Shown: positions 2,431 through 41,244 of the stretch, in pieces | Layout of the letters: every line of letters begins with the position of its first letter | Position numbering within the stretch: position 1 is the first letter of the stretch | DNA from: Octopus bimaculoides | Lineage: Eukaryota | Direction of reading: 5' to 3' | Length of the DNA: 64,000 bases | Assembly: GCF_001194135.2 (NCBI RefSeq) | Contig: NC_068991.1 | Span: 32,021,923 to 32,085,922, forward strand | Program-made: the position numbers and the translations under genes | Notes under the pieces: model-generated | The model's input: only the letters and a program-made list of their open reading frames with translations | What the model was told of the DNA's origin: nothing | Database searches by the model: none

Positions 2431-4320
2431 GGTGTGTGTCAAGAATAATGAAATTTAAGAAACACAATAACAACACTAATTAATTTGAAATATGGTAAAG
2501 CAGTCTTTGAGAAAATATTTGGGGTTGTTCAGCCATCATATTGGTGGTGGTGTTTTGGTGTGGCAGCATATATAAAATGAGTTACAATTTTGTTTGTTTG
2601 TTTATTGTTTTCTTAATGTATTTGTTTGCCTTTCAAATTTCGACATGAATTAACTGCATTACATTTACCTAAACCTCCTTGGGTGGAATGACCATTGGTT
2701 TTAATTTTATGTCTCTGCTGCTGATTCCTAAGTTACACTAGTTCATTAAATCAATAATAATGTCTTAACATAGGTGTGCGTAATCAGAGCAGACTCAGAG
2801 CTCAACAACACACATAGGTGGCCTTCTGCCACCAATGTGTTGTTGACTGAAACAAGGTGAATCAGTATCAAGAGCTAAGTATATCGACACAGACAATAGT
2901 CTTCTGACACTGATGTTTAAACAATTATTATATGCAGTAATATTTGTAAGGGGTCCACTACACTCAAGTGGATGTGATATATTGAACCCAGAGAGAGTTT
3001 AAAGTGGCTTCAAGATCATTACTAGATCAATTTCCGATCACATGTTTTTAAGTTGGGGCTTTACCTACCATGACTAACAAATGTTCACAGCAAGACACTG
3101 TGTTTACAAGTAATAATGTCACATGCTTGTGTGATAGGTTGTAATTAAATTTGATAACTTTTTGTCAAATATATAATTAATCTTGGAGGGATTTTATTTT
3201 GGGGTTTTCAGTTTATTTGGAATGAAATTTAAATAAAAATTAAAGATTAAAAGAAAAATATAAAATTTCATATTTGAGTTTTTTTACTTTGAAAATGTTT
3301 TCTTGTCTTTATAAATTTCTGTCTAGCTTGTCCATGCAAAAAAAGAAAAAAAGAAAAAGACATTAATATGAAGATCACATTGGCTTTTACAAAGTTATGA
3401 GATGAGTAATTTTTAAAGCAGCTGGGACATTGAAATACAAATATTAAAAACTAACTTTTAATGGGTATGTTAACCACAATGCCACTGGCTTTTACAGGGT
3501 CCCAACCCCTTCTTATCAAAACCAATAAGTGCTGTTAAGTAGAAGAAAGGTTTTGATTTCACGAATGTAGTTTGCTATCTATACTGGGTTCAAATCCATC
3601 AACAGACCATTTATAGTTGTCTTTAAGAAACTATTCCTTTATGAAAACTTTGTGAACAAATCCTAAAACGAGTAGCATCACTATGATTTCAAATTTCCTT
3701 GTCATGTGTTGCTAAGTAAGCCTCATCAGCCATTAAGTTGTTAGGGACAATGCTAAATACTTTTAGACAGTTTCAATAGTTTAAATCAGAAAAATTTAAC
3801 TGGTTAGAACTTGCTCACCAAGTTATATAAACAATGACATTTTTAAAAATTTCTATTTCTTTTATTTTACGTATAGTACAAAACACTTGCCAAAGTGTCT
3901 TCTACTATGTAGCACATAAGTATTCATGTGTGTAAACCCTTATCCTGACATGATGGGATGGTTTATTCACAACCATCCCATCATGAAGTGATGTCAATTT
4001 CCAGTCTTCCATAGAAAAATATGCCTGGCTTTGGGAAATATTACTTTGCTTGTAAAAGGTGAATTTTGGCAACAGGAAGGGCACCTGGCTGTAGAAAACC
4101 TGTCTCAACAGATACTAGTTTATCCAAGCAAGCATGGAACAGTGAACATGCAATGATTTGATGACTAATAATAAAGCTAGATAGCTGCCAGTGTTGGTTA
4201 TTTACTGCAAATATCAAGGAAGCTTTAGAGATGATGATCATGGTTAGAATGCCTTTATTTAAAATATGTTGATTGGATTATAGCTGATATTACAGCTATT
4301 TTATTAATACTAATGTGGTA

Positions 4321-9734: not shown

Positions 9735-10963
9735 TGAGGGGTGTTCATTAAAAATTTCCCCTGACTCACTTCGGTTATTGCAGGAAACAAAACTTGTACA
9801 GGTATATTCAAACATGTCTCTACATGTCATATGAATTGCAGCTTTCCACTAGTATCTGTTTGTCTTTTACGGCTGCTGAAGTGGACTAAGGTGTTATAAT
9901 GGAGGCAGTTGAATGCAGATCAGTGATCAGGTTCTTATTCTTGACAAGTTGTACACCAAAAGAGACTTTCAATGAGATGAAAGAAGTTTATGGTGACGAT
10001 GCGTCACCAACTCAAATGTGGTTGAACATCGGTGGAAACTGTTCCTATTCCACCACTGATAATGACACCATCCATAAAGTGGAAGTCGCTATTTTGGAGG
10101 ATCATTCGGCAACTATCCCAGGAAGTGAAGATAAGTGTAGGGTCCATAGAGAAAGTCATTCACGACCATTTGCGCATACAGAAGTTGGCTGTACGATGGA
10201 TTACCCAGATGCTCACACCTTTAGAGAAGCAGGAATGAGTCAATTACTCTTAGGCTCTTTAGGCGATGTGTCGAGAAAATGAGGAGAACTTTTTTGGCAG
10301 ACTTATCACACAGGATGAAACATGGGTCCATCACTACAATCCTGAGGCTAAAGTCCAACTGAAGCAATGGAAGCATGATAACTCACCACCTCCAAAGAAG
10401 GCTTATGTCCAACCCTCAGCAGGCAAGGTGATGCTCAGTCTTTTGGGGCTAGTGCAGAGTAGTGATGATGGATTTTCTGGCAAAGGGCAGCACACTTAAC
10501 AGAGCATATTATGCTTCTCTGCTGCAGAAATTGCGGGACACCATCAAAGCAGAGAGGCATGGCATGCTGTTCAAAGGAGTTCACCTCCTCCAAGACAACA
10601 TCCCAGTTTACAATGCGCATGTTGCCCAGATGAGAGCACACTCCTGCAACTATGAAATTTTTCTTCATCCCCTTCACTCTCCTGATTTCACACCATCTAA
10701 CTCCTACCTCTTTCCAGCCATGAAGTTGGTTTTGAAGGGGAAGCACTTTTCAGATGATGAACTGATTTCTGAGGTAAAGTCTTGACTCCAGATGCAACCT
10801 ACCAGCTTCTACAGACGAGGTCTTCACAGCTATATAAACTGATGGGAGAAGTGTGTCACCATTGGTGGTAGCTATGTAGAGAAGGACCAATAATTATGCC
10901 AAGTTTCGTTTATCCCAAACTTTGGGAAGTGGGTTAAGGGAAATCTTTAATGAACACTCCTCG
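9735..10963 (+). mobile_element. Near full-length mariner transposon, frameshifted (transposase remnant 9899 to about 10890)
   Basis: TIRs TGAGGGGTGTTCATTAAAAATTTCCC / revcomp CGAGGAGTGTTCATTAAAGATTTCCC flanked by TA; motifs ITQDETWVHHY, LLQDN and HSPDFTPSN (third catalytic D appears as N); several frameshifts. Confidence 0.95.
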
Positions 10964-13549: not shown

Positions 13550-15658
13550 AGGCTTAGGGAAAGCCCCCGGCCCATCAGGAATCTCTGCAGAGATGCTCAA
13601 AATATCTGGCAGTGTCGGCTATAGCCTAGTCACCCGTATTGTTAACCAGGTGATACATGAAGGAGTCATACCCAATGACTGGTGTAGCAGCACCATAGTC
13701 AACTGCTACAAAGGTAAAGGTGACGCTTTAGATACAAATAATTACAGAGGTATCAAGTTGTTAGATCAGGTAATGAAAGTCACGGAGAGGGTCATAGCCC
13801 AACTAATTAGGGAGAGAGTCAATTTAGATGAGATGCAGTTTGGATTTGTGCCAGGGAAAAGCACCACTGATGCTATATTTCTGGTAAGACAGCTGCAGGA
13901 GAAANNNNNNNNNNNNNNNNNNNNNNNNNNNNNNNNNNNNNNNNNNNNNNNNNNNNNNNNNNNNNNNNNNNNNNNNNNNNNNNNNNNNNNNNNNNNNNNN
14001 NNNNNNNNNNNNNNNNNNNNNNNNNNNNNNNNNNNNNNNNNNNNNNNNNNNNNNNNNNNNNNNNNCCTCCTATTTATCATAGTCCTCCAGGCGATAACGG
14101 AGGAATTCAAGACAGGATGCCCCTGGGAGCTCCTCTATACTGATGACCTTGCGCTAATTGCTGAGTCACTATCAGAACTAGAGGAGAAGTTCAGGTGTGG
14201 GAGCAAGGACTAGAATCGAAGGGCCTTAGAGTCAACTTAGCTAAAACCAAAGTCCTAATAAGTAGGAAGGTAGACAAAACACAAACCCCTTCAGGTAGAT
14301 AGCCTTGCTTGATCTGGAGAAAAGGCGTAGGTAGAAACTCTATAAGATGTACCCAGTGCAAGCTATGGACACATAAGAAGTGCAGCATTATCAAAAGAAG
14401 GTTAACTAGGAAGTTAGTTTTTGAATGTGGCAGATGTTCAGGAGCAATAAACACTGAAAATGTGCAGAAAACAACTTTGGCCATATTCCATGGAGAAAAA
14501 CTAGATGTAGTTGATAACTTCCGCTATCTAGGAGACTAAGTTAATAGTGGGGGAGGGTGCGCTGAGAGTGTAGCTGCTAGAATAAGAATAGCCTGGGTAA
14601 CGTTCAGAGAGCTCTTACCTCTGCTGGTGACAAGGGGCCTCTCACTCAGAGTAAAAGGCAGACTGTATGACGCATGTGTAGGAACAACCATGTTTCATGG
14701 CAGTGAAACATGGGCCGTGACTGTGGAGGACATGCGTAGGCTCGCAAGGAATGAAGCCAGCATGCTCCGATGGATGTGTAATGTCAGTGTGCATACTAGA
14801 CAGAGTGTAAGTACTTTGAGAGAAAAGTTGAACCTAAGAAGCAAGCATCAGTTGTAGTGTGCAACAGAGATGATTGTGCTGGTATGATCATGTGGCGAGA
14901 ATGGATGAGAATAGCTGTGTGAAAAAGTGCCACACCCTAGAAGTTGAGGGAACCTGTGGAAGAGATCCTGGGATGAGGTGGTGAGGCACAACCTTCGAAC
15001 ATTGGGCCTCACCGAGGCGATGACTTCTGACCGAGACCTTTGGAAATATGCTGTGCGTGAAAAGACCCAGCAAGCCAAGTGAGACCTAAATCCAAGGCCT
15101 CTGCCAGGGGTGTAGCCAGCCCACTTATGCGTACCTTGCTTTATTGGACACTAAACTCCACTTGCGAAGACCTGTTGAGGCAAGTGAAATCGGAATCGAA
15201 CTAAATTCGATGACTAGCACCCATGCCAACGTTGTCTCCTTCATTGGACACGAAACTCGGCTTGCGAAGACCTGTTGGGGCAAGTGAAAGCAAAATCATG
15301 ATGGCACCTGTGCCCAGAGTCGCCTTCCTGGTACTTGTGCCGGTGGCACGTGTAAAGACATTTGAGTGAGATCGTCGCCAGTGCCGCTTGACTGGCTCGT
15401 GTGCAGGTGGCACGTAAAATACACCACTTTGAGCGTGGCTGTTGCCAGTACCACCTGACTGGCCTTCATGCCGGTAGCACATAAAAGCACCCACTACACT
15501 CGGAGTGGTTGGCCTTAGGAAGGGCATCTAGCTTTAGAAACACTGCCAAATCAGATTGGAGCCTGGTGTAACCATCTGGTTCACCAGTCCTCGGTCAAAT
15601 CGTCCAACCCATGCTAGCATGGAAAGCGGACGTTAAATGATGATGATGATGATGATGA
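13550..15658 (+). mobile_element. 5'-truncated RTE-clade LINE (RT domain, 3'UTR, (GAT)n tail), disrupted
   Basis: KAPGPSG, NYRGIKLL, QFGFVPGKSTTDAIF, LLYTDDLALIAE and LFHGSETW-like motifs; stops and frameshifts; (GAT)n tail. Confidence 0.95.
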
Positions 15659-18640: not shown

Positions 18641-20850
18641 TCTATGTTTATACAGTATAGTATAAAACTATACTGATATATTCACTACATAGTAAAAAAA
18701 ACTGCTTAGATTATAATTTTATTAATATATAATTAGAATGTTCTTTTACCTCAATACTCCTTTATTAATACCAGTATATACCTATTAATCAATATTCACA
18801 GATACCATCTGATGAGTTAGTATTTAAGAGTACAATATGTATAAATATTAAACTATTTCTGAATAATTTCTTTTCCTCCCTCAATTGTGGTAAAAGTTTG
18901 GTATATACTCAAAAGTATCCATAAATTTCTATCCTTTTGTTAATATATTCTTCTTAATAACCCTCTGAATAGCCATAAACTTTATCTATATACAATATAG
19001 CAACATTGTTTGAAAACATTTAACTTTAGTACTACATGATAAGACTTCCCCTGTTTCATTATCAATGGTCTGCTAGTAGGAAACTCCCTTAGTGGTCAGC
19101 CAACATCTTGTTTTAAGTTTTCCTTTACCAAACCTCATGATTTTTATGACTATACCAACTATGATTTCTGTCTGCTCTCTCAGCCCTACCCCTAACAGAT
19201 AATGCCCATTATTCTTTCAGCCTTAGATATACAAGGTTTGATAAACTAGTCTATAAATTAAAACTGACTCCATATAAACAAATAAAATCAGTGACAGGCA
19301 GAGTCTTCTTGACAATTTATTTATTAACTTCTATGCTGTAGTAGAGGCAACATGTTCTATGTCTATCTCCTCAACTTCTTGGAGATTTTAGGTATAATTA
19401 TACTAATGTATCCATCTGTTCTAATTTAAATGAATTCTATGTTTCTGTGCAGCTGAGGATTGCTCTGCATTTTAAATTGATGCAATGATTGCATTGTTCA
19501 ACGATCATGAAATGATCGTACTGCATTACCTCTGGATATCCTTGTTGATTATTTTGATTTTAATCACCTTACTTTGAAATTGTATGGATAATACCATACT
19601 AAATTCTGGTGCCTCAACTTAAGTATCATATTCACCTGAATCTAAATTTTTGCTGAATTCATCTACCATACCCAAAGTATATATATATGTATGTATATAT
19701 ATATATATATTTCTATGTACACATGTATATATATATGTATATATACATGTATATGTGTTATTCTTTCTCTCTCTCTCATACACTCACACGCATGCGCGCA
19801 CATGCACACACAGGTATTTGAGAAATAATGTTTAAAAGTGAGATTAACCGGAAATAACCAAAGTATTATTTTACAAATTGTGAGCAGACGATAGCTGTGT
19901 ATATATATTTCTATATACGTGTGTGTGTACACAACACACACATGCTCACTCACTCACACACATGTATTTGACAAACATCATTTAAAAATGAGACTAACTG
20001 GAATTAACCAAAGTGTCATTTTACGAATTGTAAGCAGACGATAGCTTTTTAAAGCTACGCCAATGTTTTAGAATCATCTCACTTATGCTTGATAACTATT
20101 AATCTCCGAACTCTCCCAAATAAGACATCTAAAGTCAACATTAAGGTGAAGTACATTTCTAAATTCTTTGTTAGACCCTCCAGTGTTCACATTGTCAGTT
20201 ACCATTCTCTTCACGAAGAATCCATCTGAAGTTTAAGCTGGATGTACTAGAAATAGCAGCCAAATCCTTCCTGTGAGCGGACAATATATTCAATAACGAT
20301 AATAACTTAAATGGTATATATATATATATAACGATTGCTATGAAAGCAAACAATACAAATTCATTTAATTCCTAATAATATTTAATTATAAAAATATAAA
20401 AGGATTCTTAAAACATTGAATGAGGGTCCAGCAAAAGAGAATAGGAAAGGGGTCTATAAGCAAAAAAAGGGTTTGAGAACTACTGCTACTTCTATTATAG
20501 CCTTGGGCTGACCAAAGCCTTGTCTTTTTATTAAAATAGAAAAAAGATCCATACAAGAACAGCAAGTTTCCAAACTTACTGGATGGGAGAGACATTACTG
20601 AAGATGAAAGAGAAGGAGGGGGAGAGGTTTTTCTATTTATGGTGAAGTGTCTTCAAGATTGTGAAACATTTCTCATACATCATTTCTGTTTATAACAAAG
20701 ATGTGATGTTCTAAACTGTTCCAGTAAGATCATAATAAGATGTTGTTATGTGATCATAAGCACTGAAAGACATCGTAACATGGTCACACAACTGCTAGAA
20801 AGGTGCCACATAGCATGATCATAACTACAAGGAAGACATCATTACATATA

Positions 20851-21637
20851 TGTAGGATTTTCGAGCGAGATCGTTGCCAGTGCCCCTGGACTGGCTCTTG
20901 TGCGGGTGACACACGAAATACACCATTTTGAGCGTGGCCGTTGCCAGTACCGCCTGACTGGCCTTGTAGGATTTTCGAGCGAGATCGTTGCCAGTGCACC
21001 TGGACTGGCTCTTGTGCAGGTGGCACATAAAATACACCATTTTGAGCGTGGCCGTTGCCAGTACCGCCTGACTGGCCTTGTAGGATTTTCGAGCGAGATC
21101 GTTGCCAGTGCACCTGGACTNNNNNNNNNNNNNNNNNNNNNNNNNNNNNNNNNNNNNNNNNNNNNNNNNNNNNNNNNNNNNNNNNNNNNNNNNNNNNNNN
21201 NNNNNNNNNNNNNNNNNNCATATATGTAGGATTTTCGAGCGAGATCGTTGCCAGTGCCCCTGGACTGGCTCTTGTGCGGGTGACACACGAAATACACCAT
21301 TTTGAGCGTGGCCGTTGCCAGTACCGCCTGACTGGCCTTGTAGGATTTTCGAGCGAGATCGTTGCCAGTGCACCTGGACTGGCTCTTGTGCAGGTGGCAC
21401 ATAAAATACACCATTTTGAGCGTGGCCGTTGCCAGTACTGCCTGACTGGCCTCCGTGCGGGTGACACATAAAAGCACCCACTACACTCTCGGAGTGGTTG
21501 GCGTTAGGAAGGGCATCCAGCTGTAGAAACTCTGCCAAATCAGATTGGAGCCTGGTATAGCCATCTGGTTTCACCAGTCCTCAGTCAAATCGTTCAACCC
21601 ATGCTAGCATGGAAAGCGGACGTTAAACGATGATGAT
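20851..21637 (+). mobile_element. RTE 3' end with tandem 114-bp 3'UTR units
   Basis: Units start at 20851, 20965 and 21079 and resume after the gap; ends in the same ...ggaaagcggacgttaaacgatgatgat tail as 15480-15658. Confidence 0.9.
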
Positions 21638-24055: not shown

Positions 24056-24268
24056 TTGCCAGTACCGCCTGACTGGCCTTCGTGCCAGTGGCACGTATAA
24101 GCACCCACTACACTCTCTGAGTGGTTGGCGTTAGGAAGGGCATCCAGCTGTAGAAACTCTGCCAAATCAGATTGGAGCTGGTGTAGCCATCTGGTTCACC
24201 AGTCCTCAGTCAAATCGTCCAACCCATGCTAGCATGGAAAGCGGATGTTAAACGAAGATGATGATGAT
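24056..24268 (+). mobile_element. RTE 3'-end fragment
   Basis: High similarity to 15480-15658 including the (GAT)n tail. Confidence 0.9.
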
Positions 24269-35518: not shown

Positions 35519-36356
35519 ATATACATACATATATATATAATATACATATATATATATATACATATACATACATACATATACATACATACATATACATNNN
35601 NNNNNNNNNNNNNNNNNNNNNNNNNNNNNNNNNNNNNNNNNNNNNNNNNNNNNNNNNNNNNNNNNNNNNNNNNNNNNNNNNNNNNNNNNNNNNNNNNNNN
35701 NNNNNNNNNNNNNNNNNNNNNNNNNNNNNNNNNNNNNNNNNNNNNNNNNNNNNNNNNNNNNNNNNNNNNNNNNNNNNNNNNNNNNNNNNNNNNNNNNNNN
35801 NNNNNNNNNNNNNNNNNNNNNNNNNNNNNNNNNNNNNNNNNNNNNNNNNNNNNNNNNNNNNNNNNNNNNNNNNNNNNNNNNNNNNNNNNNNNNNNNNNNN
35901 NNNNNNNNNNNNNNNNNNNNNNNNNNNNNNNNNNNNNNNNNNNNNNNNNNNNNNNNNNNNNNNNNNNNNNNNNNNNNNNNNNNNNNNNNNNNNNNNNNNN
36001 NNNNNNNNNNNNNNNNNNNNNNNNNNNNNNNNNNNNNNNNNNNNNNNNNNNNNNNNNNNNNNNNNNNNNNNNNNNNNNNNNNNNNNNNNNNNNNNNNNNN
36101 NNNNNNNNNNNNNNNNNNNNNNNNNNNNNNNNNNNNNNNNNNNNNNNNNNNNNNNNNNNNNNNNNNNNNNNNNNNNNNNNNNNNNNNNNNNNNNNNNNNN
36201 NNNNNNNNNNNNNNNNNNNNNNNNNNNNNNNNNNNNNNNNNNNNNNNNNNNNNNNNNNNNNNNNNNNNNNNNNNNNNNNNNNNNNNNNNNNNNNNNNNNN
36301 NNNNNNNNNNNNNNNNNNNNNNNNNNNNNNNNNNNNNNNNNNNNNNNNNNNNNNNT

Positions 36357-37534
36357 AATGCATTAAAGAAAATCATTGAAGAAAATGGGTTTCTTCTCGA
36401 ACAGATTTTTAACATAGACAAAACTGGATTGTATTGGAAAAAACTGCCAGACTGTTCATTCATTTCCAAGGAGGAGAAAACTATTCTGGGCTACAAGGTC
36501 TCAAAAGAATGTGATCATTATGTTGGGAGGTAATTGTGCAGGAGATTTTCAGTTCAAGTCATTGCTTATGTATCATGCACACAACTCCGTGCCCTGAAGA
36601 ACATACCCAAGGCATCTCTCCCTGTTATATGGATGGCAAATTCAAAAGCATGGGTTATTGTTGTTGTTTTTAAAGATTGGTTCTTCAATCACTTTATTCC
36701 AGTAGCAGAGAAGTACTGTGAGGAGAAAGGGATTCCTTTCAAGGTTTTACTTATCTTAAATAATGCTCCTGGCCACCCGCAAAACATTGTAGATTTTGAT
36801 CCCAACGTTACCATTCTATACCTCCCTCCGAACACCACACCCCTTCTGCAGCCAATGGATCAGGGAATAATTGCTATCTTCAAGCATTACTATATGAAGC
36901 ATACGCTGCAGCAAGCAATAGCTACAACTGATCTTGATGAGTCCATCACACTTTGTTACTTTTGGAAGAGATATGATATCTACAAGGCAGAACATAGCAG
37001 TGGCATAGAATGATGTACAGTGCACAGCTATGAATGGTGTATGGAAGAAGCTATGCCCGCAATTCGTGAATGATTTTAAGGGGTTTGATAATGTTGGCAT
37101 CAACAAAATGTTGGTGACTACAAGCAAAGAACTGGAAATGGATTTGGAGGAGGAGGATTTCACAGATTTATTTGAAAAAGACAAGCAGCCCCTGACGAAT
37201 GAGGATTTGATGGAGCTTCACAAGCAGCAAAATAAAGAAGAGGAAGTCAAACCGGAGCCACATCACTTTACTGTTAAGAAAATGCAGCAAGCATTTGCAT
37301 ATTTCGAAAAAGGTCTTTCTATGTTTGAAGATATGGATCCAAAATGCTCAATGCTTTTCCAAGATTATGGGGGCTTGTTATGAAGCTTTTGCTCCTTATA
37401 ATGTAATCCTTGAGGAAAAGAAGAATACAGTTCAAGGAACTTTCAACCAGTTTTTTAAGCACACTGAACAACAAGAAAAGCCAGAGTCAGCTGTTGATGT
37501 TGATGATTCACAGCCATCTATATCTGCCATGTAA
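36357..37534 (+). mobile_element. Tigger/pogo-type DDE transposase pseudogene (5' part lost in gap)
   Basis: QIFNIDKTGLYWKKLP, VLLILNNAPGHP, YLPPNTTPLLQPMDQGII and VWKKLCP motifs; frameshifted. Confidence 0.92.
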
Positions 37535-39083
37535 ACTACCAAATTGTATGTCTGTATTGGTAAATTTAAAATAATTTAGTTTTTTTTTACTATTGCAAAA
37601 TAATAATAATTACTGAATTTGTTTTTTAAGCTTAAAAAAGACTTTTATTTTACCATGTCTTATTGCAAACCGCATTCATAAATAAAGCGTCTGTGATCTG
37701 CTTTTTTTTTTTACTGTATTGTATTAAAAAATAAAAATTATTTGTGTGTAAGCTTAAAATAGGATTTTATTAACCATGTATTATTGAAAATGCATTCATA
37801 AATAAAGTCCAGAACTGGGAATGGTTATTATCAGCTTAGCCTAGAGACAAGTTAATTTGACTTGAGTCGTGTCTCCTGGAACCAATTAATGATGTAGGGT
37901 GAAGTATATAGTTGGAGCAAGGAAGACATGTTCTTGTTTGTCTCCTGTCCTAGCTTGATTCACACATTCGCCACCACAACCTCGTTTAGGCTTAGCAGCC
38001 CGTGTTTGTTTTCACCTATTTTGACCCCCCACAAAATCTCAAATTTTATTTAATTTGCTTTACAGGAGCAACTGTTTTATTAAAAGCATATATTGTTGTT
38101 AAATGCTCAAAATACGAGACTAGAAAAACAGCCAACAACTGATGAAGGGTCATTCTTCATGTTGTTTGTTTTGTTTTCCATTTGTGTCTTTTGTTGTTCG
38201 AAAGAATAGTTCATGTTCTATGTACTCGTGCTTTGTCCTTTCTTTTGTTGTACACGTTGCATGACGTCCAGTGCCCACATATGCATATATATATATATAT
38301 ATATANNNNNNNNNNNNNNNNNNNNNNNNNNNNNNNNNNNNNNNNNNNNNNNNNNNNNNNNNNNNNNNNNNNNNNNNNNNNNNNNNNNNNNNNNNNNNNN
38401 NNNNNNNNNNNNNNNNNNNNNNNNNNNNNNNNNNNNNNNNNNNNNNNNNNNNNNNNNNNNNNNNNNNNNNNNNNNNNNNNNNNNNNNNNNNNNNNNNNNN
38501 NNNNNNNNNNNNNNNNNNNNNNNNNNNNNNNNNNNNNNNNNNNNNNNNNNNNNNNNNNNNNNNNNNNNNNNNNNNNNNNNNNNNNNNNNNNNNNNNNNNN
38601 NNNNNNNNNNNNNNNNNNNNNNNNNNNNNNNNNNNNNNNNNNNNNNNNNNNNNNNNNNNNNNNNNNNNNNNNNNNNNNNNNNNNNNNNNNNNNNNNNNNN
38701 NNNNNNNNNNNNNNNNNNNNNNNNNNNNNNNNNNNNNNNNNNNNNNNNNNNNNNNNNNNNNNNNNNNNNNNNNNNNNNNNNNNNNNNNNNNNNNNNNNNN
38801 NNNNNNNNNNNNNNNNNNNNNNNNNNNNNNNNNNNNNNNNNNNNNNNNNNNNNNNNNNNNNNNNNNNNNNNNNNNNNNNNNNNNNNNNNNNNNNNNNNNN
38901 NNNNNNNNNNNNNNNNNNNNNNNNNNNNNNNNNNNNNNNNNNNNNNNNNNNNNNNNNNNNTATATATATATACATACACACACACACACACACACACATC
39001 ACTAAAGTGACAAAAGTTAGTACCAGCATTGTTAGAAATAAGAGCCAAAACAACTCTTAGTCATGAGAACACACTTATCTTAT

Positions 39084-39117
39084 TGACTTCACATTTGATT
39101 AATGCTCGTCAGTGACT
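39084..39117 (-). pseudogene. Truncated hammerhead copy (CUGACGA intact, GAAG, stem III and cleavage site deleted)
   Basis: The ~55-bp deletion in unit 1 removes the 3' half of stem III, the NUH triplet and the 3' strand of stem I. Confidence 0.75.
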
Positions 39118-39408
39118 CTTACCCAGCAGCCTAGGGTTAAGCTCACTCACCTTGTCAGTTTATAAGAGTTACTGTGGAAATCTCACACTGATTTCATAAA
39201 TGGTAAAAGTGCAAATTATAAATAATAATGCTGGCTTATTCGAAACTTAACAACTGAAAGGCAGAACTATAGATGTTACTAAATTGACTAAGCGTACTAG
39301 TTAGCACCAGCATTGCTAGAAATATGGGTCAAAACAGCTCTTAGCCATGAGAACACACTTATCTTATGACTGACAAGGAAGACAGGCTCCCTACAACATC
39401 TGGAGCAT

Positions 39409-39456
39409 AGTCAGATCACCAGTGACTTTGCATTTGATTAATGCTTGTCAGTGGCC
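39409..39456 (-). pseudogene. Degenerate hammerhead copy (CUGACAA, AAAG)
   Basis: Collinear with 40011-40058, 7 of 48 positions differ; G8, G12 and A15.1 are altered. Confidence 0.8.
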
Positions 39457-39747
39457 CTTCCTCAGCAGCCTAGGGTTAAGCTTGCTCACCTTGTCAGTTT
39501 ATAAGAGTTACCACAGAACTCCCACGTTGATTTCATAAATGGTAAAAGTGAAAATTATAAATAATAAAGGTGGTTTATTTGCAATTTAACAACCGAAAGG
39601 CAGAACTATAGATGTCACTAAAGTAACTAAGAGAACTAGTTAGCACCAGCATTGCTAGAATTAAGAGTCAAAACAACTCTTAGCCATGAGAACGCACTTA
39701 TCTTATGACTGACAAGGGAGGCAGGTTCCCTACAACATCGAGTGCAT

Positions 39748-39795
39748 AACCATATCACCAATGAGTTCACACTTGATTAATGCTGATCAGTGGTT
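39748..39795 (-). pseudogene. Degenerate hammerhead copy (CUGAUCA, GAAC, AUA)
   Basis: Same 48-nt layout; stem I shows a compensatory change (AACCA/UGGUU); G8 and A15.1 are altered. Confidence 0.8.
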
Positions 39796-40010
39796 CTTAC
39801 CTGGCTGTCTAGCAATGCTGGTGCTAAGTAGTACCCTTAGTCACTTTAGTGACATCTATAGTTCTGCATTTTGGTTGTTAAATTGTGAATAAGACACTTT
39901 TATTATATATAATTTTCACTTTTACCATTTATGAAATCAGCACAGGATTTCTATGGTAACACTTATAAACTGACAAGATGAGCAAGCTTAACCCCAGGCT
40001 GCCGAATAAG

Positions 40011-40058
40011 AGCCACTGATGAGCATTAATCAAATGTGAAATCACTGGTGATCTGGCT
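40011..40058 (+). ncRNA. Type I hammerhead ribozyme, all core nucleotides intact
   Basis: AGCCA-CUGAUGA-GCAUU(AAUCA)AAUGU-GAAA-UCA(CUGG)UGA-UC-UGGCU: stems I, II and III all pair; AUC triplet with predicted cleavage after 40053. Confidence 0.88.
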
Positions 40059-40250
40059 ATGCCCCGGATGTTGTGGGGAGCCTGCTTCCCTTGTCAGTCA
40101 TAAGATAAGTACATTCTCATGGATAAGAGTTGTTTTGACTGTTATTTCTAGCAATACTAGTGCTAACTAGTACCCTTAGTCACTTTAGTGACATCTATAG
40201 TTCTGCCTTTCGGTTGTTAAATTGTGAATAAACTACCTTCATTACTTACA

Positions 40251-41244
40251 TCTACTACATATGTGGAAAATTCTGTCTATGGGTGTGTTTGTGGAGTTGT
40301 TAGCTAACTCCTCCTACATCGTTTTATTGATTTTAATGAAACTTGACACATGAGTAGAAGTCATGTCTGGAAACCTCATGGCATACTCAGATTGTTAAAA
40401 AAAAAATCGATAATAGGGCGCCTGGAAGGGATCCTTATATATATATATAAACAAATAGTAAATGAGTATATGCATATATACGTACAGGTATGTGCACACC
40501 GACATCCACCTGTATGTATAGGTGCATATCTGGGTACAGGACATTGCAAACCATATATATATATATATATATCTAATATATTTCATTTTAACAGCCAAGG
40601 GAAACAACCCATTCATTTTCCTAAATCATTTGGTAATAAATCAAATCAAGTATGCTTATTTCTTAGTATTTGAACTGTTAGAGTTATTTTCACAATTTAT
40701 CCAGTACAATCCTTAAACAAGTAAATAGTATTTTTCTAAACAATAGATCCACTTATTTTGGTTAGTCACTTGTTCACGAATATACCACGACTAGCGCTGC
40801 TGAGGGTAATATTCTCTGGGAACGCACAAAAGCCCTTTTCAGAGTTATTTACTTTGAATTGTTATTATCTCATCAGCCTGTTATTACGTAACAGGCTTCA
40901 CAATTTTAGTATACTTACCTTATTAGTATTTCCTCCTAAGTTCCATATACTATGGGAATGCATTAAAACCCTTTTCGGGGTTACTTTATTTGAATTTTTA
41001 CTATTGGGTAACTAATTTCATGTTATTACATAACTGAATTCACAATTTGGGTATTCATAACTTATTGGAAATTCCTAAAAACAAGATCCTGTGTAAGACA
41101 GTTTGGTATTCTCTGTAAATGCACAAAAACCGTTTAGAGGGCTACATACTTTGTATTGTTGTTATTGGATTAGTGAAACAATTATGAGAATGGAACCAAG
41201 GGATAAGCCCCGCTTTTCCGGGAATTGCCAGGTATGTCAGCTAG
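40251..41244 (+). mobile_element. Non-autonomous Helitron-like element
   Basis: A|TC 5' end, CTAG|T 3' end, subterminal GC-rich ccgggaattgccagg hairpin-like motif, 5' actcctcc...gattttaatgaaacttgacac motif and degenerate internal ~155-bp repeats. Confidence 0.7.

What the first reader, a model, noticed from the sequence alone, without database searches (positions are those of the whole stretch)
39001..40240. Hammerhead-ribozyme repeat array (retrozyme / satellite-2-like system) upstream of the first RHD exon, probably in a reticulon intron
Seen: a 339-bp unit repeated about 2.5 times forward and about 1.3 times inverted, with a 48-nt hammerhead layout (stem I, CUGANGA, stem II, GAAA, stem III, NUH) at the same position in four units and compensatory stem I changes (AGCCA/UGGCU versus AACCA/UGGUU). 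Established: tandem 170-400-bp units each carrying a type I hammerhead define newt satellite 2, Schistosoma SMalpha, cave-cricket pDo500 and metazoan non-LTR retrozymes; these self-cleave to monomers that can circularise and are thought to be mobilised by Penelope-like RTs. Inference: this is an octopus family of the same kind. I do not know of a cephalopod description but could not search.
Basis: partly seen in the sequence, partly recalled or inferred. Interest (0 to 1): 0.92.

Follow-up and report, generated by a model that had tools for sequence, protein, structure and literature searches.

The report
Decayed hammerhead-ribozyme repeat in octopus DNA
A 339-base repeat, present as 2.6 forward and 1.3 inverted copies upstream of a reticulon exon, is most likely the decayed remnant of a hammerhead-ribozyme retroelement of a kind already known in other molluscs, with only one of its four ribozyme positions still intact.

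Summary
The repeat is real. It has a 339-nt unit, with about 2.56 units at 38999-39811 and about 1.31 inverted units at 39808-40250, joined head-to-head at a CTAG. A complete type I hammerhead layout (helices of 5, 5 and 4 bp) exists only at 40011-40058(+); none of 2000 shuffles of the window gave one. The other three homologous positions are defective: G8C plus A15.1C; G8A plus G12A plus A15.1G; and a 55-nt deletion that removes helix III and the cleavage site.

Most core changes are CpG decay, so the ancestral core can be read as CUGACGA...GC-GAAR. Position 15.1, which must be A, cannot be reconstructed. Helix I shows two compensatory double changes. Rfam gives nothing at curated thresholds, but it also misses a second, stronger hammerhead layout found in an Octopus sinensis locus.

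The tandem plus inverted architecture, the microsatellite flank, 39-41% G+C and a self-paired monomer all fit a non-LTR retrozyme or Penelope-type insertion. No other genomic copy could be retrieved, so family status, copy number and activity are untested.

Verdict: probably a fossil member of a known class, plausibly undescribed in cephalopods.

The parts
38999..39811 (-). Left arm: about 2.56 units of the 339-nt repeat, with the hammerhead-sense strand on the minus strand. Sub-units in hammerhead sense are L0 39812-39753 (a partial unit at the 5' end of the arm), L1 39752-39414 (a full 339-nt monomer), L2 39413-39084 (330 nt) and L3 39083-38999 (partial).
39808..40250 (+). Right arm: about 1.31 inverted units, with the hammerhead-sense strand on the plus strand. 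R0 is 39808-40053 and R1 is 40054 to about 40250. The outer boundary is fuzzy (40244-40256) because it falls in the unit's own AT-rich stretch.
39808..39811 (.). Head-to-head junction of the two arms at a palindromic CTAG that both arms share (4-5 nt of microhomology).
   Evidence: read directly from the sequence
40011..40058 (+). The only sequence-intact type I hammerhead layout: AGCCA CUGAUGA GCAUU-AAUCA-AAUGU GAAA UCAC-UG-GUGA U C|UGGCU. The predicted cleavage is between C17 (40053) and U1.1 (40054). The 10.1-11.1 pair is G.U.
39748..39795 (-). Degenerate hammerhead at the L0/L1 junction: AACCA CUGAUcA ... GAAc UCAU-UG-GUGA U A|UGGUU. All three helices are kept (5/5/4 bp). The core is broken at G8 (C) and 15.1 (C). 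Helix I carries the compensated G-C to A-U change.
39409..39456 (-). Degenerate hammerhead at the L1/L2 junction: GGCCA CUGACaA GCAUU..AAUGC aAAg UCAC-UG-GUGA U C|UGaCU. It has G8A and G12A (both CpG to CpA), A15.1G, and an A x C mismatch in helix I. It keeps the canonical G10.1-C11.1 pair.
39084..39117 (-). Truncated hammerhead at the L2/L3 junction: AGuCA CUGACGA GCAUU..AAUGU GAAg UCA, then a 55-nt deletion flanked by AGTCA microhomology. The deletion removes helix III, the cleavage site and the first 46 nt of the next unit.
   Evidence: (spacing 284 versus 339)
38961..38998 (.). (TA)n(CA)n microsatellite abutting the 3' end (in hammerhead sense) of the left arm. The assembly gap 38306-38960 lies inside or beside it.

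Best explanation
The locus is a fossil insertion of a short, hammerhead-bearing tandem-repeat retroelement, of the metazoan non-LTR retrozyme or Penelope-dependent kind.

INFERRED LIFE CYCLE OF THE LIVE ELEMENT. Multimeric transcripts self-cleave at AUC|U between units. They probably do this as double hammerheads, because helix III is unstable alone but self-complementary. The 339-nt monomers are circularised by a host RNA ligase. The self-paired circle or multimer is then reverse-transcribed at a nicked microsatellite target by a Penelope-like RT/GIY-YIG enzyme.

INFERRED ORIGIN OF THIS LOCUS. Two cDNAs, primed from the two sides of the target, gave two 5'-truncated arms of 2.56 and 1.31 units. 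They joined head-to-head at a CTAG microhomology. The copy has since decayed by about 7% per unit, largely at CpGs.

SHOWN:
- the repeat anatomy;
- the single intact core and the three broken ones;
- helix I covariation;
- the CpG-type pattern of the core changes;
- the microsatellite flank;
- the self-paired monomer.

INFERRED: transcription, cleavage, circularisation, the mobilising enzyme and the twin-priming origin.

Today the locus cannot release monomers. The plus-strand arm has one cleavage site only, and the minus-strand arm has none.
For: 1. A full hammerhead layout with helices of 5/5/4 bp is unique in the window. It was absent from 2000 shuffles and, with one core mismatch allowed, present in 1 of 300.
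2. It sits at the same unit position in all four copies.
3. The core changes fit CpG decay. N7-G8 reads CG, TG, TC and CA across copies; 11.1-12 reads TG, TG, TG and CA. The ancestor is therefore read as CUGACGA and C11.1-G12, which restores the canonical G10.1-C11.1 pair and G8/G12.
4. Helix I has three variants, all paired: UGGCU/AGCCA, UGGUU/AACCA and UGACU/AGUCA.
5. The helix III strand AUCACUGGUGAU has no stable hairpin (0.0 kcal/mol) but forms a 12-bp self-duplex of -14.4 kcal/mol. This is the dimeric design described for metazoan type I hammerheads (PMC4209133).
6. The unit is 339 nt with 39-41% G+C. The circular consensus monomer folds with z = -3.7, against -2.6 and -0.75 for individual copies. 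Seven pairs change on both sides, against 3.6 +/- 1.3 in shuffles (8 of 500 reach it) and 0-4 in slid controls. This matches the retrozyme description (PMC7229834).
7. Tandem plus inverted 5'-truncated copies and a microsatellite target are the stated hallmarks of Penelope-type integration (PMC8557442). Penelope-like elements are present in Octopus (PMC13282606).
8. An unrelated hammerhead layout (helices 7/7/3 bp) occurs twice, head-to-head and next to (TA)n, in O. sinensis locus L051. Such elements therefore exist in octopus genomes. Rfam misses those too.
9. The two arms are only 86% complementary, so the inversion is not an assembly artefact.
Against: - Only 1 of 4 cores is intact.
- Position 15.1 is A, C, G and G in the four copies. 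Under a star-like history of the units, G is several-fold more likely than A in the array's founder. That founder would not have been a canonical hammerhead, and the intact copy would owe its A to a later chance change.
- N7 and 15.1 covary (U-A versus C-G). This maintains a competing extended hairpin, not the hammerhead.
- That hairpin is the minimum-free-energy fold: -14.6 kcal/mol against -6.8 for the hammerhead fold.
- Rfam hammerhead models score only about 16 bits.
- No second locus of the family was found in about 168 kb of octopod DNA.
- A protein-database search with a spurious ORF from the unit found nothing.
- No RT or GIY-YIG ORF lies near the array.
- Covariation rests on three or four related sequences.
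Confidence: 0.66

Rival explanations
1. The hammerhead is real, but the array is a DNA-level product. A single hammerhead-bearing fragment, for example the terminal repeat (pLTR) of a Penelope-like element, was amplified in place by unequal crossing-over or replication slippage. It was then partly inverted by template switching at the CTAG. Under this reading it is not a retrozyme that moved as a circular RNA.
For: - The units are 80-87% identical and star-like, which fits one old local amplification.
- The junction sits at a palindromic microhomology.
- The internal deletion is also microhomology-mediated.
- No other copy was found in about 168 kb of octopod DNA.
- Retrozymes and pLTRs are reported to be related sequences anyway (bioRxiv 10.64898/2026.07.22.740005).
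Against: - Compensatory changes occur within monomers in helix I and in long-range helices. These are not expected from neutral decay in place.
- The head-to-head arrangement with a microsatellite flank mirrors the pattern described for retrotransposition (PMC8557442) and the one seen in L051.
- The two outer ends fall at different unit positions, as expected for a template without a fixed 3' end.
Confidence: 0.2
2. There is no ribozyme ancestry. A locus-specific tandem and inverted duplication contains an imperfect hairpin that happens to lie one or two substitutions from a hammerhead. One copy drifted into the full motif.
For: - Three of four copies fail the core, and 15.1 is not A in three of them.
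- The N7-15.1 covariation and the minimum-free-energy fold favour a plain extended hairpin.
- Rfam is negative at curated thresholds.
- My extrapolation from the looser descriptor (6 of 300 shuffles at helices 4/3/2) gives roughly 2e-4 chance motifs per 64-kb window. That would be a handful per 2.7-Gb genome.
Against: - The motif was absent from 2000 shuffles, and appeared in only 1 of 300 with one mismatch allowed.
- The motif would also have to fall inside the 2% of the window that is a 339-nt tandem repeat of retrozyme-like size and composition.
- CpG-aware reconstruction restores G8, G12 and G10.1-C11.1.
- The changes in the helix I strand that lies 3' of the cleavage site are explained by hammerhead helix I, not by the alternative hairpin.
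- Helix III is self-complementary, as in known dimeric hammerheads.
Confidence: 0.1
3. The structure is a foldback-type or other DNA transposon whose long terminal inverted repeats are built of sub-repeats. The hammerhead-like segment would be incidental.
For: The inverted arms are 441 nt long with a 148-nt spacer. A Tigger/pogo transposase remnant lies about 1.6 kb away, at 36356-37697.
Against: - The arms are unequal (2.56 versus 1.31 units) and meet head-to-head. The 148-nt spacer reported between the best-matching arms is itself repeat sequence, so there is no internal non-repeat segment.
- No terminal inverted repeat or target-site duplication signature is present.
- The Tigger copies in L047-L051 carry no such repeat.
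- No tRNA-like sequence is present.
Confidence: 0.03

Closest known systems
Metazoan non-LTR retrozymes (Cervera & de la Pena 2020, PMC7229834), in particular the Mytilus galloprovincialis repeats of about 350-390 bp
   Same: Short tandem units (339 nt here), G+C below 45%, a type I hammerhead spanning the unit boundary, a predicted self-paired monomer, a mollusc host, and co-existence with Penelope-like elements in the host genus.
   Different: Here only one of four cores is intact, and the array is tiny and partly inverted. Copy number, expression and circular RNAs are unknown. No sequence comparison with the mussel elements was possible.
   Same: The unit length is close to the newt and schistosome repeats. 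There is one hammerhead per unit. Helix III is too weak to fold alone but can form an extended helix III in a dimer, as described for most metazoan type I hammerheads (PMC4209133).
   Different: Helix III here has 4 bp with a near-palindromic 10-mer, not the 1-2 bp reported as usual. Helix II is 5 bp with a 5-nt loop. There is no evidence of satellite-scale abundance.
Hammerheads in the pseudo-LTRs of Penelope-like elements, and the insertion architecture of those elements (PMC4209133, PMC8557442)
   Same: Partial tandems plus an inverted 5'-truncated copy placed head-to-head. Insertion next to a (TA)n or (CA)n microsatellite. Paired hammerheads a few hundred bases apart on opposite strands (here 39748-39795 on the minus strand and 40011-40058 on the plus strand).
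   Different: No RT or GIY-YIG ORF is present. The unit repeats with a strict 339-nt period. The hammerhead is closer to the 'canonical' than to the 'minimal' Penelope type. It belongs to a different sequence family from the motif in O. sinensis locus L051, which has CUGAAGA and a 7-bp helix II.
Intronic hammerheads of amniotes (Rfam Hammerhead_HH9 and HH10)
   Same: HH9 is the best-scoring clan-level Rfam hammerhead alignment, and it is in the correct register. The location may be intronic.
   Different: The score is 15.9 bits against a cut-off of 52. The element is repeat-borne, not a conserved single-copy element. The intact copy is antisense to the host gene.

Membership tests
Hammerhead ribozyme, type I | Conserved core: C3 U4 G5 A6 N7 G8 A9, G12 A13 A14, the A15.1-U16.1 pair, and H17 (not G) at the cleavage site | tested here: inconclusive
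   Met at 40011-40058(+). Not met at the three other homologous positions: G8C plus A15.1C; G8A plus G12A plus A15.1G; A15.1G plus deletion of the cleavage site. A CpG-aware reading restores G8 and G12 in the ancestor, but 15.1 stays ambiguous (A, C, G, G).
Hammerhead ribozyme, type I | Three helices around the core, with helix I open-ended | tested here: met
   Helices of 5, 5 and 4 bp in the R copy and in L0/L1. None of 2000 shuffles gave such a layout.
Hammerhead ribozyme, type I | Covariation that supports the helices | tested here: inconclusive
   Helix I has three pair variants with two double compensations. Helix II does not vary except G.U versus G-C at 10.1-11.1. Helix III has one one-sided change. 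N7-15.1 covaries in favour of a competing hairpin. Only four copies are available.
Hammerhead ribozyme, type I | Score at or above the curated threshold of an Rfam hammerhead model | tested here: not met
   No match. HH9 scores 15.9 bits against 52 and RAGATH-1-hammerhead 16.2 against 56.3. Control: a helix 7/7/3 hammerhead layout in O. sinensis locus L051 is also missed.
Hammerhead ribozyme, type I | Site-specific self-cleavage in Mg2+ | not testable with these tools
   Needs in vitro transcription. The thermodynamic model puts the monomeric hammerhead fold at -6.8 kcal/mol and the alternative hairpin at -14.6.
Metazoan non-LTR retrozyme | Tandem units of about 170-400 bp, from dimers to multimers | tested here: met
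   339-nt period, with 2.56 plus 1.31 units.
Metazoan non-LTR retrozyme | G+C below 45% | tested here: met
   39-41%.
Metazoan non-LTR retrozyme | A functional type I hammerhead in each unit | tested here: not met
   At this locus one core is intact and three are broken. Whether the family consensus has a functional core is unknown.
Metazoan non-LTR retrozyme | A highly self-paired monomer RNA | tested here: met
   The circular fold of the consensus has z = -3.7 with 64% of bases paired. The alignment-based fold is rod-like or branched and is closed by helix I. The antisense strand scores alike, so strand is not resolved.
Metazoan non-LTR retrozyme | A dispersed multi-copy family in the genome | tested here: inconclusive
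   No further copy in the other ~62.7 kb of the window or in 105.7 kb of O. bimaculoides and O. sinensis DNA. No whole-genome search was possible.
Metazoan non-LTR retrozyme | Expression as linear and circular RNAs of unit length | not testable with these tools
   No RNA data were on hand.
Penelope-like element (autonomous copy or its pLTR) | An ORF with a telomerase-like RT and a GIY-YIG endonuclease | tested here: not met
   ORFs of at least 110 aa were listed and nine of them were scanned against Pfam. These gave only a LINE-type RVT_1 fragment at 13.6 kb, a Tigger DDE_1 and a mariner HTH. None of them adjoins the array. The nominal 655-nt gap is too small to hide an element of more than 3 kb, unless the gap is mis-sized.
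Penelope-like element (autonomous copy or its pLTR) | Partial tandem plus inverted 5'-truncated copies, and a microsatellite target | tested here: met
   Head-to-head arms. (TA)n(CA)n lies at the outer end of the left arm. The literature description is in PMC8557442.

The most novel reading that the evidence does not exclude
This would be the first trace of a cephalopod retrozyme family that is still active elsewhere in the genome and yields ~339-nt circular RNAs through double-hammerhead cleavage. At this locus the decay would be orientation-dependent. The three copies that lie in the sense of the reticulon transcript are all catalytically dead, while the only intact core is antisense. That pattern would be expected if a self-cleaving motif inside a pre-mRNA is selected against. 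It agrees with the reported depletion of retrozymes from introns (bioRxiv 10.64898/2026.07.22.740005).
Probability: 0.12. Interest if true: 0.55.

Novelty: new member of a known kind. Interest (0 to 1): 0.3.

Why it matters
If a genome-wide search confirms it, the distribution of hammerhead retrozymes would extend to cephalopods. It would also give octopus researchers, who already study unusual RNA biology and transposon activity in neural tissue, a candidate source of abundant small circular RNAs and a marker of Penelope-type retrotransposition.

The locus is a clean small example of three things. First, such elements insert as tandem plus inverted arms joined by microhomology at a microsatellite. 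Second, they decay through CpG loss at two core dinucleotides. Third, curated Rfam thresholds miss short metazoan hammerheads.

None of this changes what is known about how the class works.

Tried and rejected
1. Fetching other genomic copies.
- The 54-aa antisense ORF that spans the hammerhead, given as an alignment of three copies, shared no words with any protein in the 5.8-billion-protein index.
- A 20-mer conserved in three units gave 37 metagenome hits. All were chance matches of 20-24 nt.
- Window ORFs are not on record in the contig collection.
- The RHD exon finds only proteins of 83% identity or less, from distant species with about 70% nt identity and no repeat.
- Five octopus loci fetched through Tigger proteins (105.7 kb) hold no copy.

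2. Rfam at gathering thresholds and at E<=10 found no hammerhead or any other ribozyme class on either strand.

3. A search of the paper library for the hammerhead sequence strings found nothing.

4. A tRNA or SINE origin was rejected. ARAGORN finds nothing.

5. An assembly artefact was rejected as the cause of the inversion. The arms are 86% complementary, not about 100%, and no N lies at the junction. The perfect 'inverted repeats' I2-I6 are N-run artefacts.

6. Pfam did not confirm my by-eye reading of a GIY-YIG-like motif in L051 ORF 3616-4047(-). The Penelope association of that second hammerhead is therefore not established.
Full report
1. THE OBSERVATION

The region 38999-40250 holds a 339-nt repeat. 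Tandem Repeats Finder reports period 339 with 85% matches. The repeat finder reports direct copies spaced 339 nt apart and inverted arms of 441 nt that are 86% complementary.

I read both arms on the strand that carries the hammerhead-like segment.
- The left arm is 39811 down to 38999 on the minus strand. It holds 2.56 units: L0 partial, L1 full (39752-39414), L2 (39413-39084) and L3 partial.
- The right arm is 39808 to about 40250 on the plus strand. It holds 1.31 units: R0 and R1.
- The arms meet 5'-end to 5'-end at a palindromic CTAG (39808-39811) that both share.
- One unit boundary (L2/L3) has a 55-nt deletion flanked by AGTCA on both sides.
- The outer end of the left arm abuts a (TA)n(CA)n microsatellite (38961-38998), followed by an assembly gap (38306-38960).

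Units are 80-87% identical in all pairings, with no clear sister pairs. No other copy exists in the window. Because the arms differ by 14% and no N lies at the junction, the inversion is not an assembly artefact.

2. THE FOUR HAMMERHEAD POSITIONS

- R, 40011-40058(+): AGCCA CUGAUGA GCAUU-AAUCA-AAUGU GAAA UCAC-UG-GUGA U C|UGGCU
- L0/L1, 39795-39748(-): AACCA CUGAUcA GCAUU-AAUCA-AgUGU GAAc UCAu-UG-GUGA U A|UGGUU
- L1/L2, 39456-39409(-): GGCCA CUGACaA GCAUU-AAUCA-AAUGC aAAg UCAC-UG-GUGA U C|UGaCU
- L2/L3, 39117-39084(-): AGuCA CUGACGA GCAUU-AAUCA-AAUGU GAAg UCA[55 nt deleted]

Only R meets the hammerhead core. G8 is lost in two copies and G12 in one. A15.1 is lost in three. The cleavage site is lost in one.

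3. CHANCE

I wrote a descriptor: CUGANGA, a helix II hairpin, GAAA, a helix III hairpin closed by A15.1-U16.1, H17, then helix I.
- It finds one hit in the real window.
- With the observed helix lengths (5/5/4 bp) it finds none in 2000 dinucleotide shuffles.
- With one core mismatch allowed it finds a hit in 1 of 300 shuffles.
- With loose helices (4/3/2 bp) it finds hits in 6 of 300.

Extrapolating from the loose setting gives about 2e-4 per 64-kb window, which would be a handful of chance motifs per octopus-sized genome. A chance motif would also have to fall inside a retrozyme-sized tandem repeat that covers 2% of the window.

4. RFAM

- Nothing reaches gathering thresholds in the window.
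- No ribozyme family appears at E<=10 over 38960-40400.
- On 86 nt alone, Hammerhead_HH9 (15.9 bits, cut-off 52) and RAGATH-1-hammerhead (16.2 bits, cut-off 56.3) align in the right register.

As a control, two copies of a different and stronger hammerhead layout that I found in an O. sinensis locus are not detected either. They are missed at gathering thresholds and at E<=10 on 86 nt. The Rfam negative therefore lowers the formal membership claim but is weak evidence against ribozyme ancestry.

5. WHAT THE SUBSTITUTIONS SAY

At N7-G8 the four copies read TG, TC, CA and CG. At 11.1-12 they read TG, TG, CA and TG. A mix of TG and CA at one dinucleotide is the classical signature of an ancestral CpG. 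I therefore read the founder as CUGACGA and ...AAUGC GAA... This restores G8, G12 and the canonical G10.1-C11.1 pair. It is an inference.

Position 15.1 is A (R), C (L0), G (L1) and G (L2). Under a star-like history G is several-fold likelier than A in the founder. If L1 and L2 are sisters, the two states are about equal. The founder of this array may therefore already have been inactive, with R regaining A by chance.

N7 and 15.1 covary (U-A in R, C-G in L1 and L2). This extends helix II into a long hairpin in which CCACUGAU pairs with AUCACUGG. That hairpin is the minimum-free-energy fold: -14.6 kcal/mol against -6.8 for the hammerhead fold. With CpGs restored the values are -13.8 against -9.1 for 15.1=A, and -18.0 against -9.4 for 15.1=G. 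Stable inactive folds that hide the hammerhead are usual in viroid-like and retrozyme RNAs, so this does not refute the ribozyme reading. It does mean a monomeric R transcript would probably cleave poorly.

6. EVIDENCE FOR RNA-LEVEL SELECTION IN THE FAMILY

Helix I occurs in three fully paired versions.
- UGGCU/AGCCA in R.
- UGGUU/AACCA in L0/L1.
- UGACU/AGUCA, formed by the two ends of monomer L2.

That makes two independent double compensations. The changes in the strand 3' of the cleavage site are not explained by the competing hairpin.

The helix III strand AUCACUGGUGAU has no stable hairpin of its own but forms a 12-bp self-duplex of -14.4 kcal/mol. This is the double-hammerhead design described for most metazoan type I motifs (PMC4209133).

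The circular consensus monomer is more structured than its shuffles (z = -3.7) and more structured than individual copies (z = -2.6 and -0.75). An alignment fold of three monomers gives a rod-like or branched structure closed by helix I. Seven of its pairs change on both sides, against 3.6 +/- 1.3 in column shuffles (8 of 500 reach that) and 0-4 in slid controls. With three or four related sequences these signals are suggestive, not proof.

7. ARCHITECTURE AND MECHANISM

Craig et al. (PMC8557442) describe Penelope-type insertions as follows:
- partial tandems;
- an inverted 5'-truncated copy at the 5' end;
- a bias for (TA)n or (CA)n microsatellites.

Cervera & de la Pena 2014 note paired hammerheads 100-700 bp apart on opposite strands. 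This locus shows all of these features.

The two outer (3') ends fall at different unit positions, about 137 and about 197. Each falls where the unit resembles the microsatellite. This fits priming on a template without a fixed 3' end, such as a circle or a multimer.

I infer two cDNAs primed from the two sides of the target, joined at CTAG. The class itself is documented in molluscs: non-LTR retrozymes with units of about 300 bp, G+C below 45% and type I hammerheads, expressed as 170-400-nt circular RNAs (mussel units of about 350-390 bp; PMC7229834). A 2026 preprint derives these elements from Penelope pLTRs. Octopus genomes hold Penelope-like elements (PMC13282606).

8. HOST AND CONTEXT

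The Tigger ORF at 36534-37013 has its best hits in O. bimaculoides and O. sinensis, at 79-81% aa identity. The window shares transposable elements at 86-96% nt with loci of those genomes. The window is therefore octopod, but the species was not identified.

Reticulon RHD exons lie on the minus strand at 33869-33657, 31473 to about 31330, 26499-26440, 25345-25295 and 22015-21953. The array is 5.1-6.4 kb upstream in gene sense. Whether it is intronic was not tested.

The three dead copies are in the sense of the gene, and the intact one is antisense. With n=4 this is only a lead.

9. A SECOND OCTOPUS HAMMERHEAD

O. sinensis locus L051 holds two inverted copies of AAUGUGC CUGAAGA AUAUGUU...AACAUAU GAAA CUAUUAGU A GCACAUU.
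- The plus-strand copy is at 4011-4069, with helices of 7/7/3 bp.
- The minus-strand copy is at 2440-2493, with helices of 4/7/3 bp.
- They lie in ~90-100-nt inverted arms, 1.5 kb apart and head-to-head.
- The 3' end of the minus-strand copy runs into (TA)n.

About 0.03 such motifs would be expected by chance in 105.7 kb at my loose setting. Hammerhead-bearing inverted insertions therefore exist in octopus genomes, which raises the prior for the main reading. An ORF between the two copies looks GIY-YIG-like by eye, but Pfam does not confirm it.

10. LIMITS

I could not retrieve any other copy of the 339-nt unit. Copy number, the family consensus (especially 15.1), expression and activity therefore remain open. 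I found no paper describing cephalopod retrozymes or hammerhead satellites in the searchable library.

11. VERDICT

The most likely reading is a decayed, non-functional insertion of a hammerhead-bearing tandem-repeat retroelement (confidence 0.66). It would be a new, cephalopod member of a known kind. Interest is 0.3.

Noticed in passing
L051 2404-2493(-) and 4011-4102(+) (O. sinensis GCA_006345805.1, CM016878.1:26939576-26960505): Two mutually inverted copies of a different hammerhead layout (CUGAAGA, 7-bp helix II, helix I of 7 or 4 bp). They are head-to-head and 1.5 kb apart. One 3' end runs into (TA)n. An ORF between them (3616-4047, minus strand) looks GIY-YIG-like by eye, but Pfam finds nothing. 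Rfam misses both motifs.
   Followed up: partly
window 33869-33657, 31473-~31330, 26499-26440, 25345-25295, 22015-21953 (minus strand): Five exons of a reticulon homology domain, found by tblastn with ORFs from a distant relative's contig (L038). The first exon is 83% identical in protein to the best database hit. No hit of 100% identity exists in the protein collection, so the source species' reticulon is not represented there.
   Followed up: partly
window 36356-37697 (+): A Tigger/pogo transposase remnant (DDE_1, E = 1e-25). It is 86-88% nt identical to copies in O. bimaculoides and O. sinensis. It lies just left of the assembly gap that borders the array.
   Followed up: partly
window 13593-14213 (+) and 9899-10282 (+): A LINE-type reverse transcriptase fragment (a weak RVT_1 hit, interrupted by an N gap) and a mariner-like HTH_48 fragment.
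   Followed up: partly
window 15441-15658, 21426-21637, 24056-24268: A ~215-nt dispersed repeat present three times in the window. It is 90-94% identical to two places in O. bimaculoides locus L049. It is probably a SINE-like element. The overlapping ORFs at 20784-21574 show repeated peptide blocks.
   Followed up: no
window 40810-41165: A separate short tandem repeat with a period of about 136-161 nt (three copies, 78-79% identical), about 560 nt to the right of the array. It is unrelated in sequence to the 339-nt unit.
   Followed up: no
window 38282-38978: The perfect 'inverted repeats' I2-I6 reported by the repeat finder are runs of N from the assembly gap (38306-38960), not sequence.
   Followed up: yes
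window 40011-40058 and the homologous positions: Hammerhead positions N7 and 15.1 covary (U-A versus C-G). This preserves an alternative extended hairpin that sequesters the core. It may be a conformational switch of the kind known in viroids, or simply shared ancestry of two units.
   Followed up: partly
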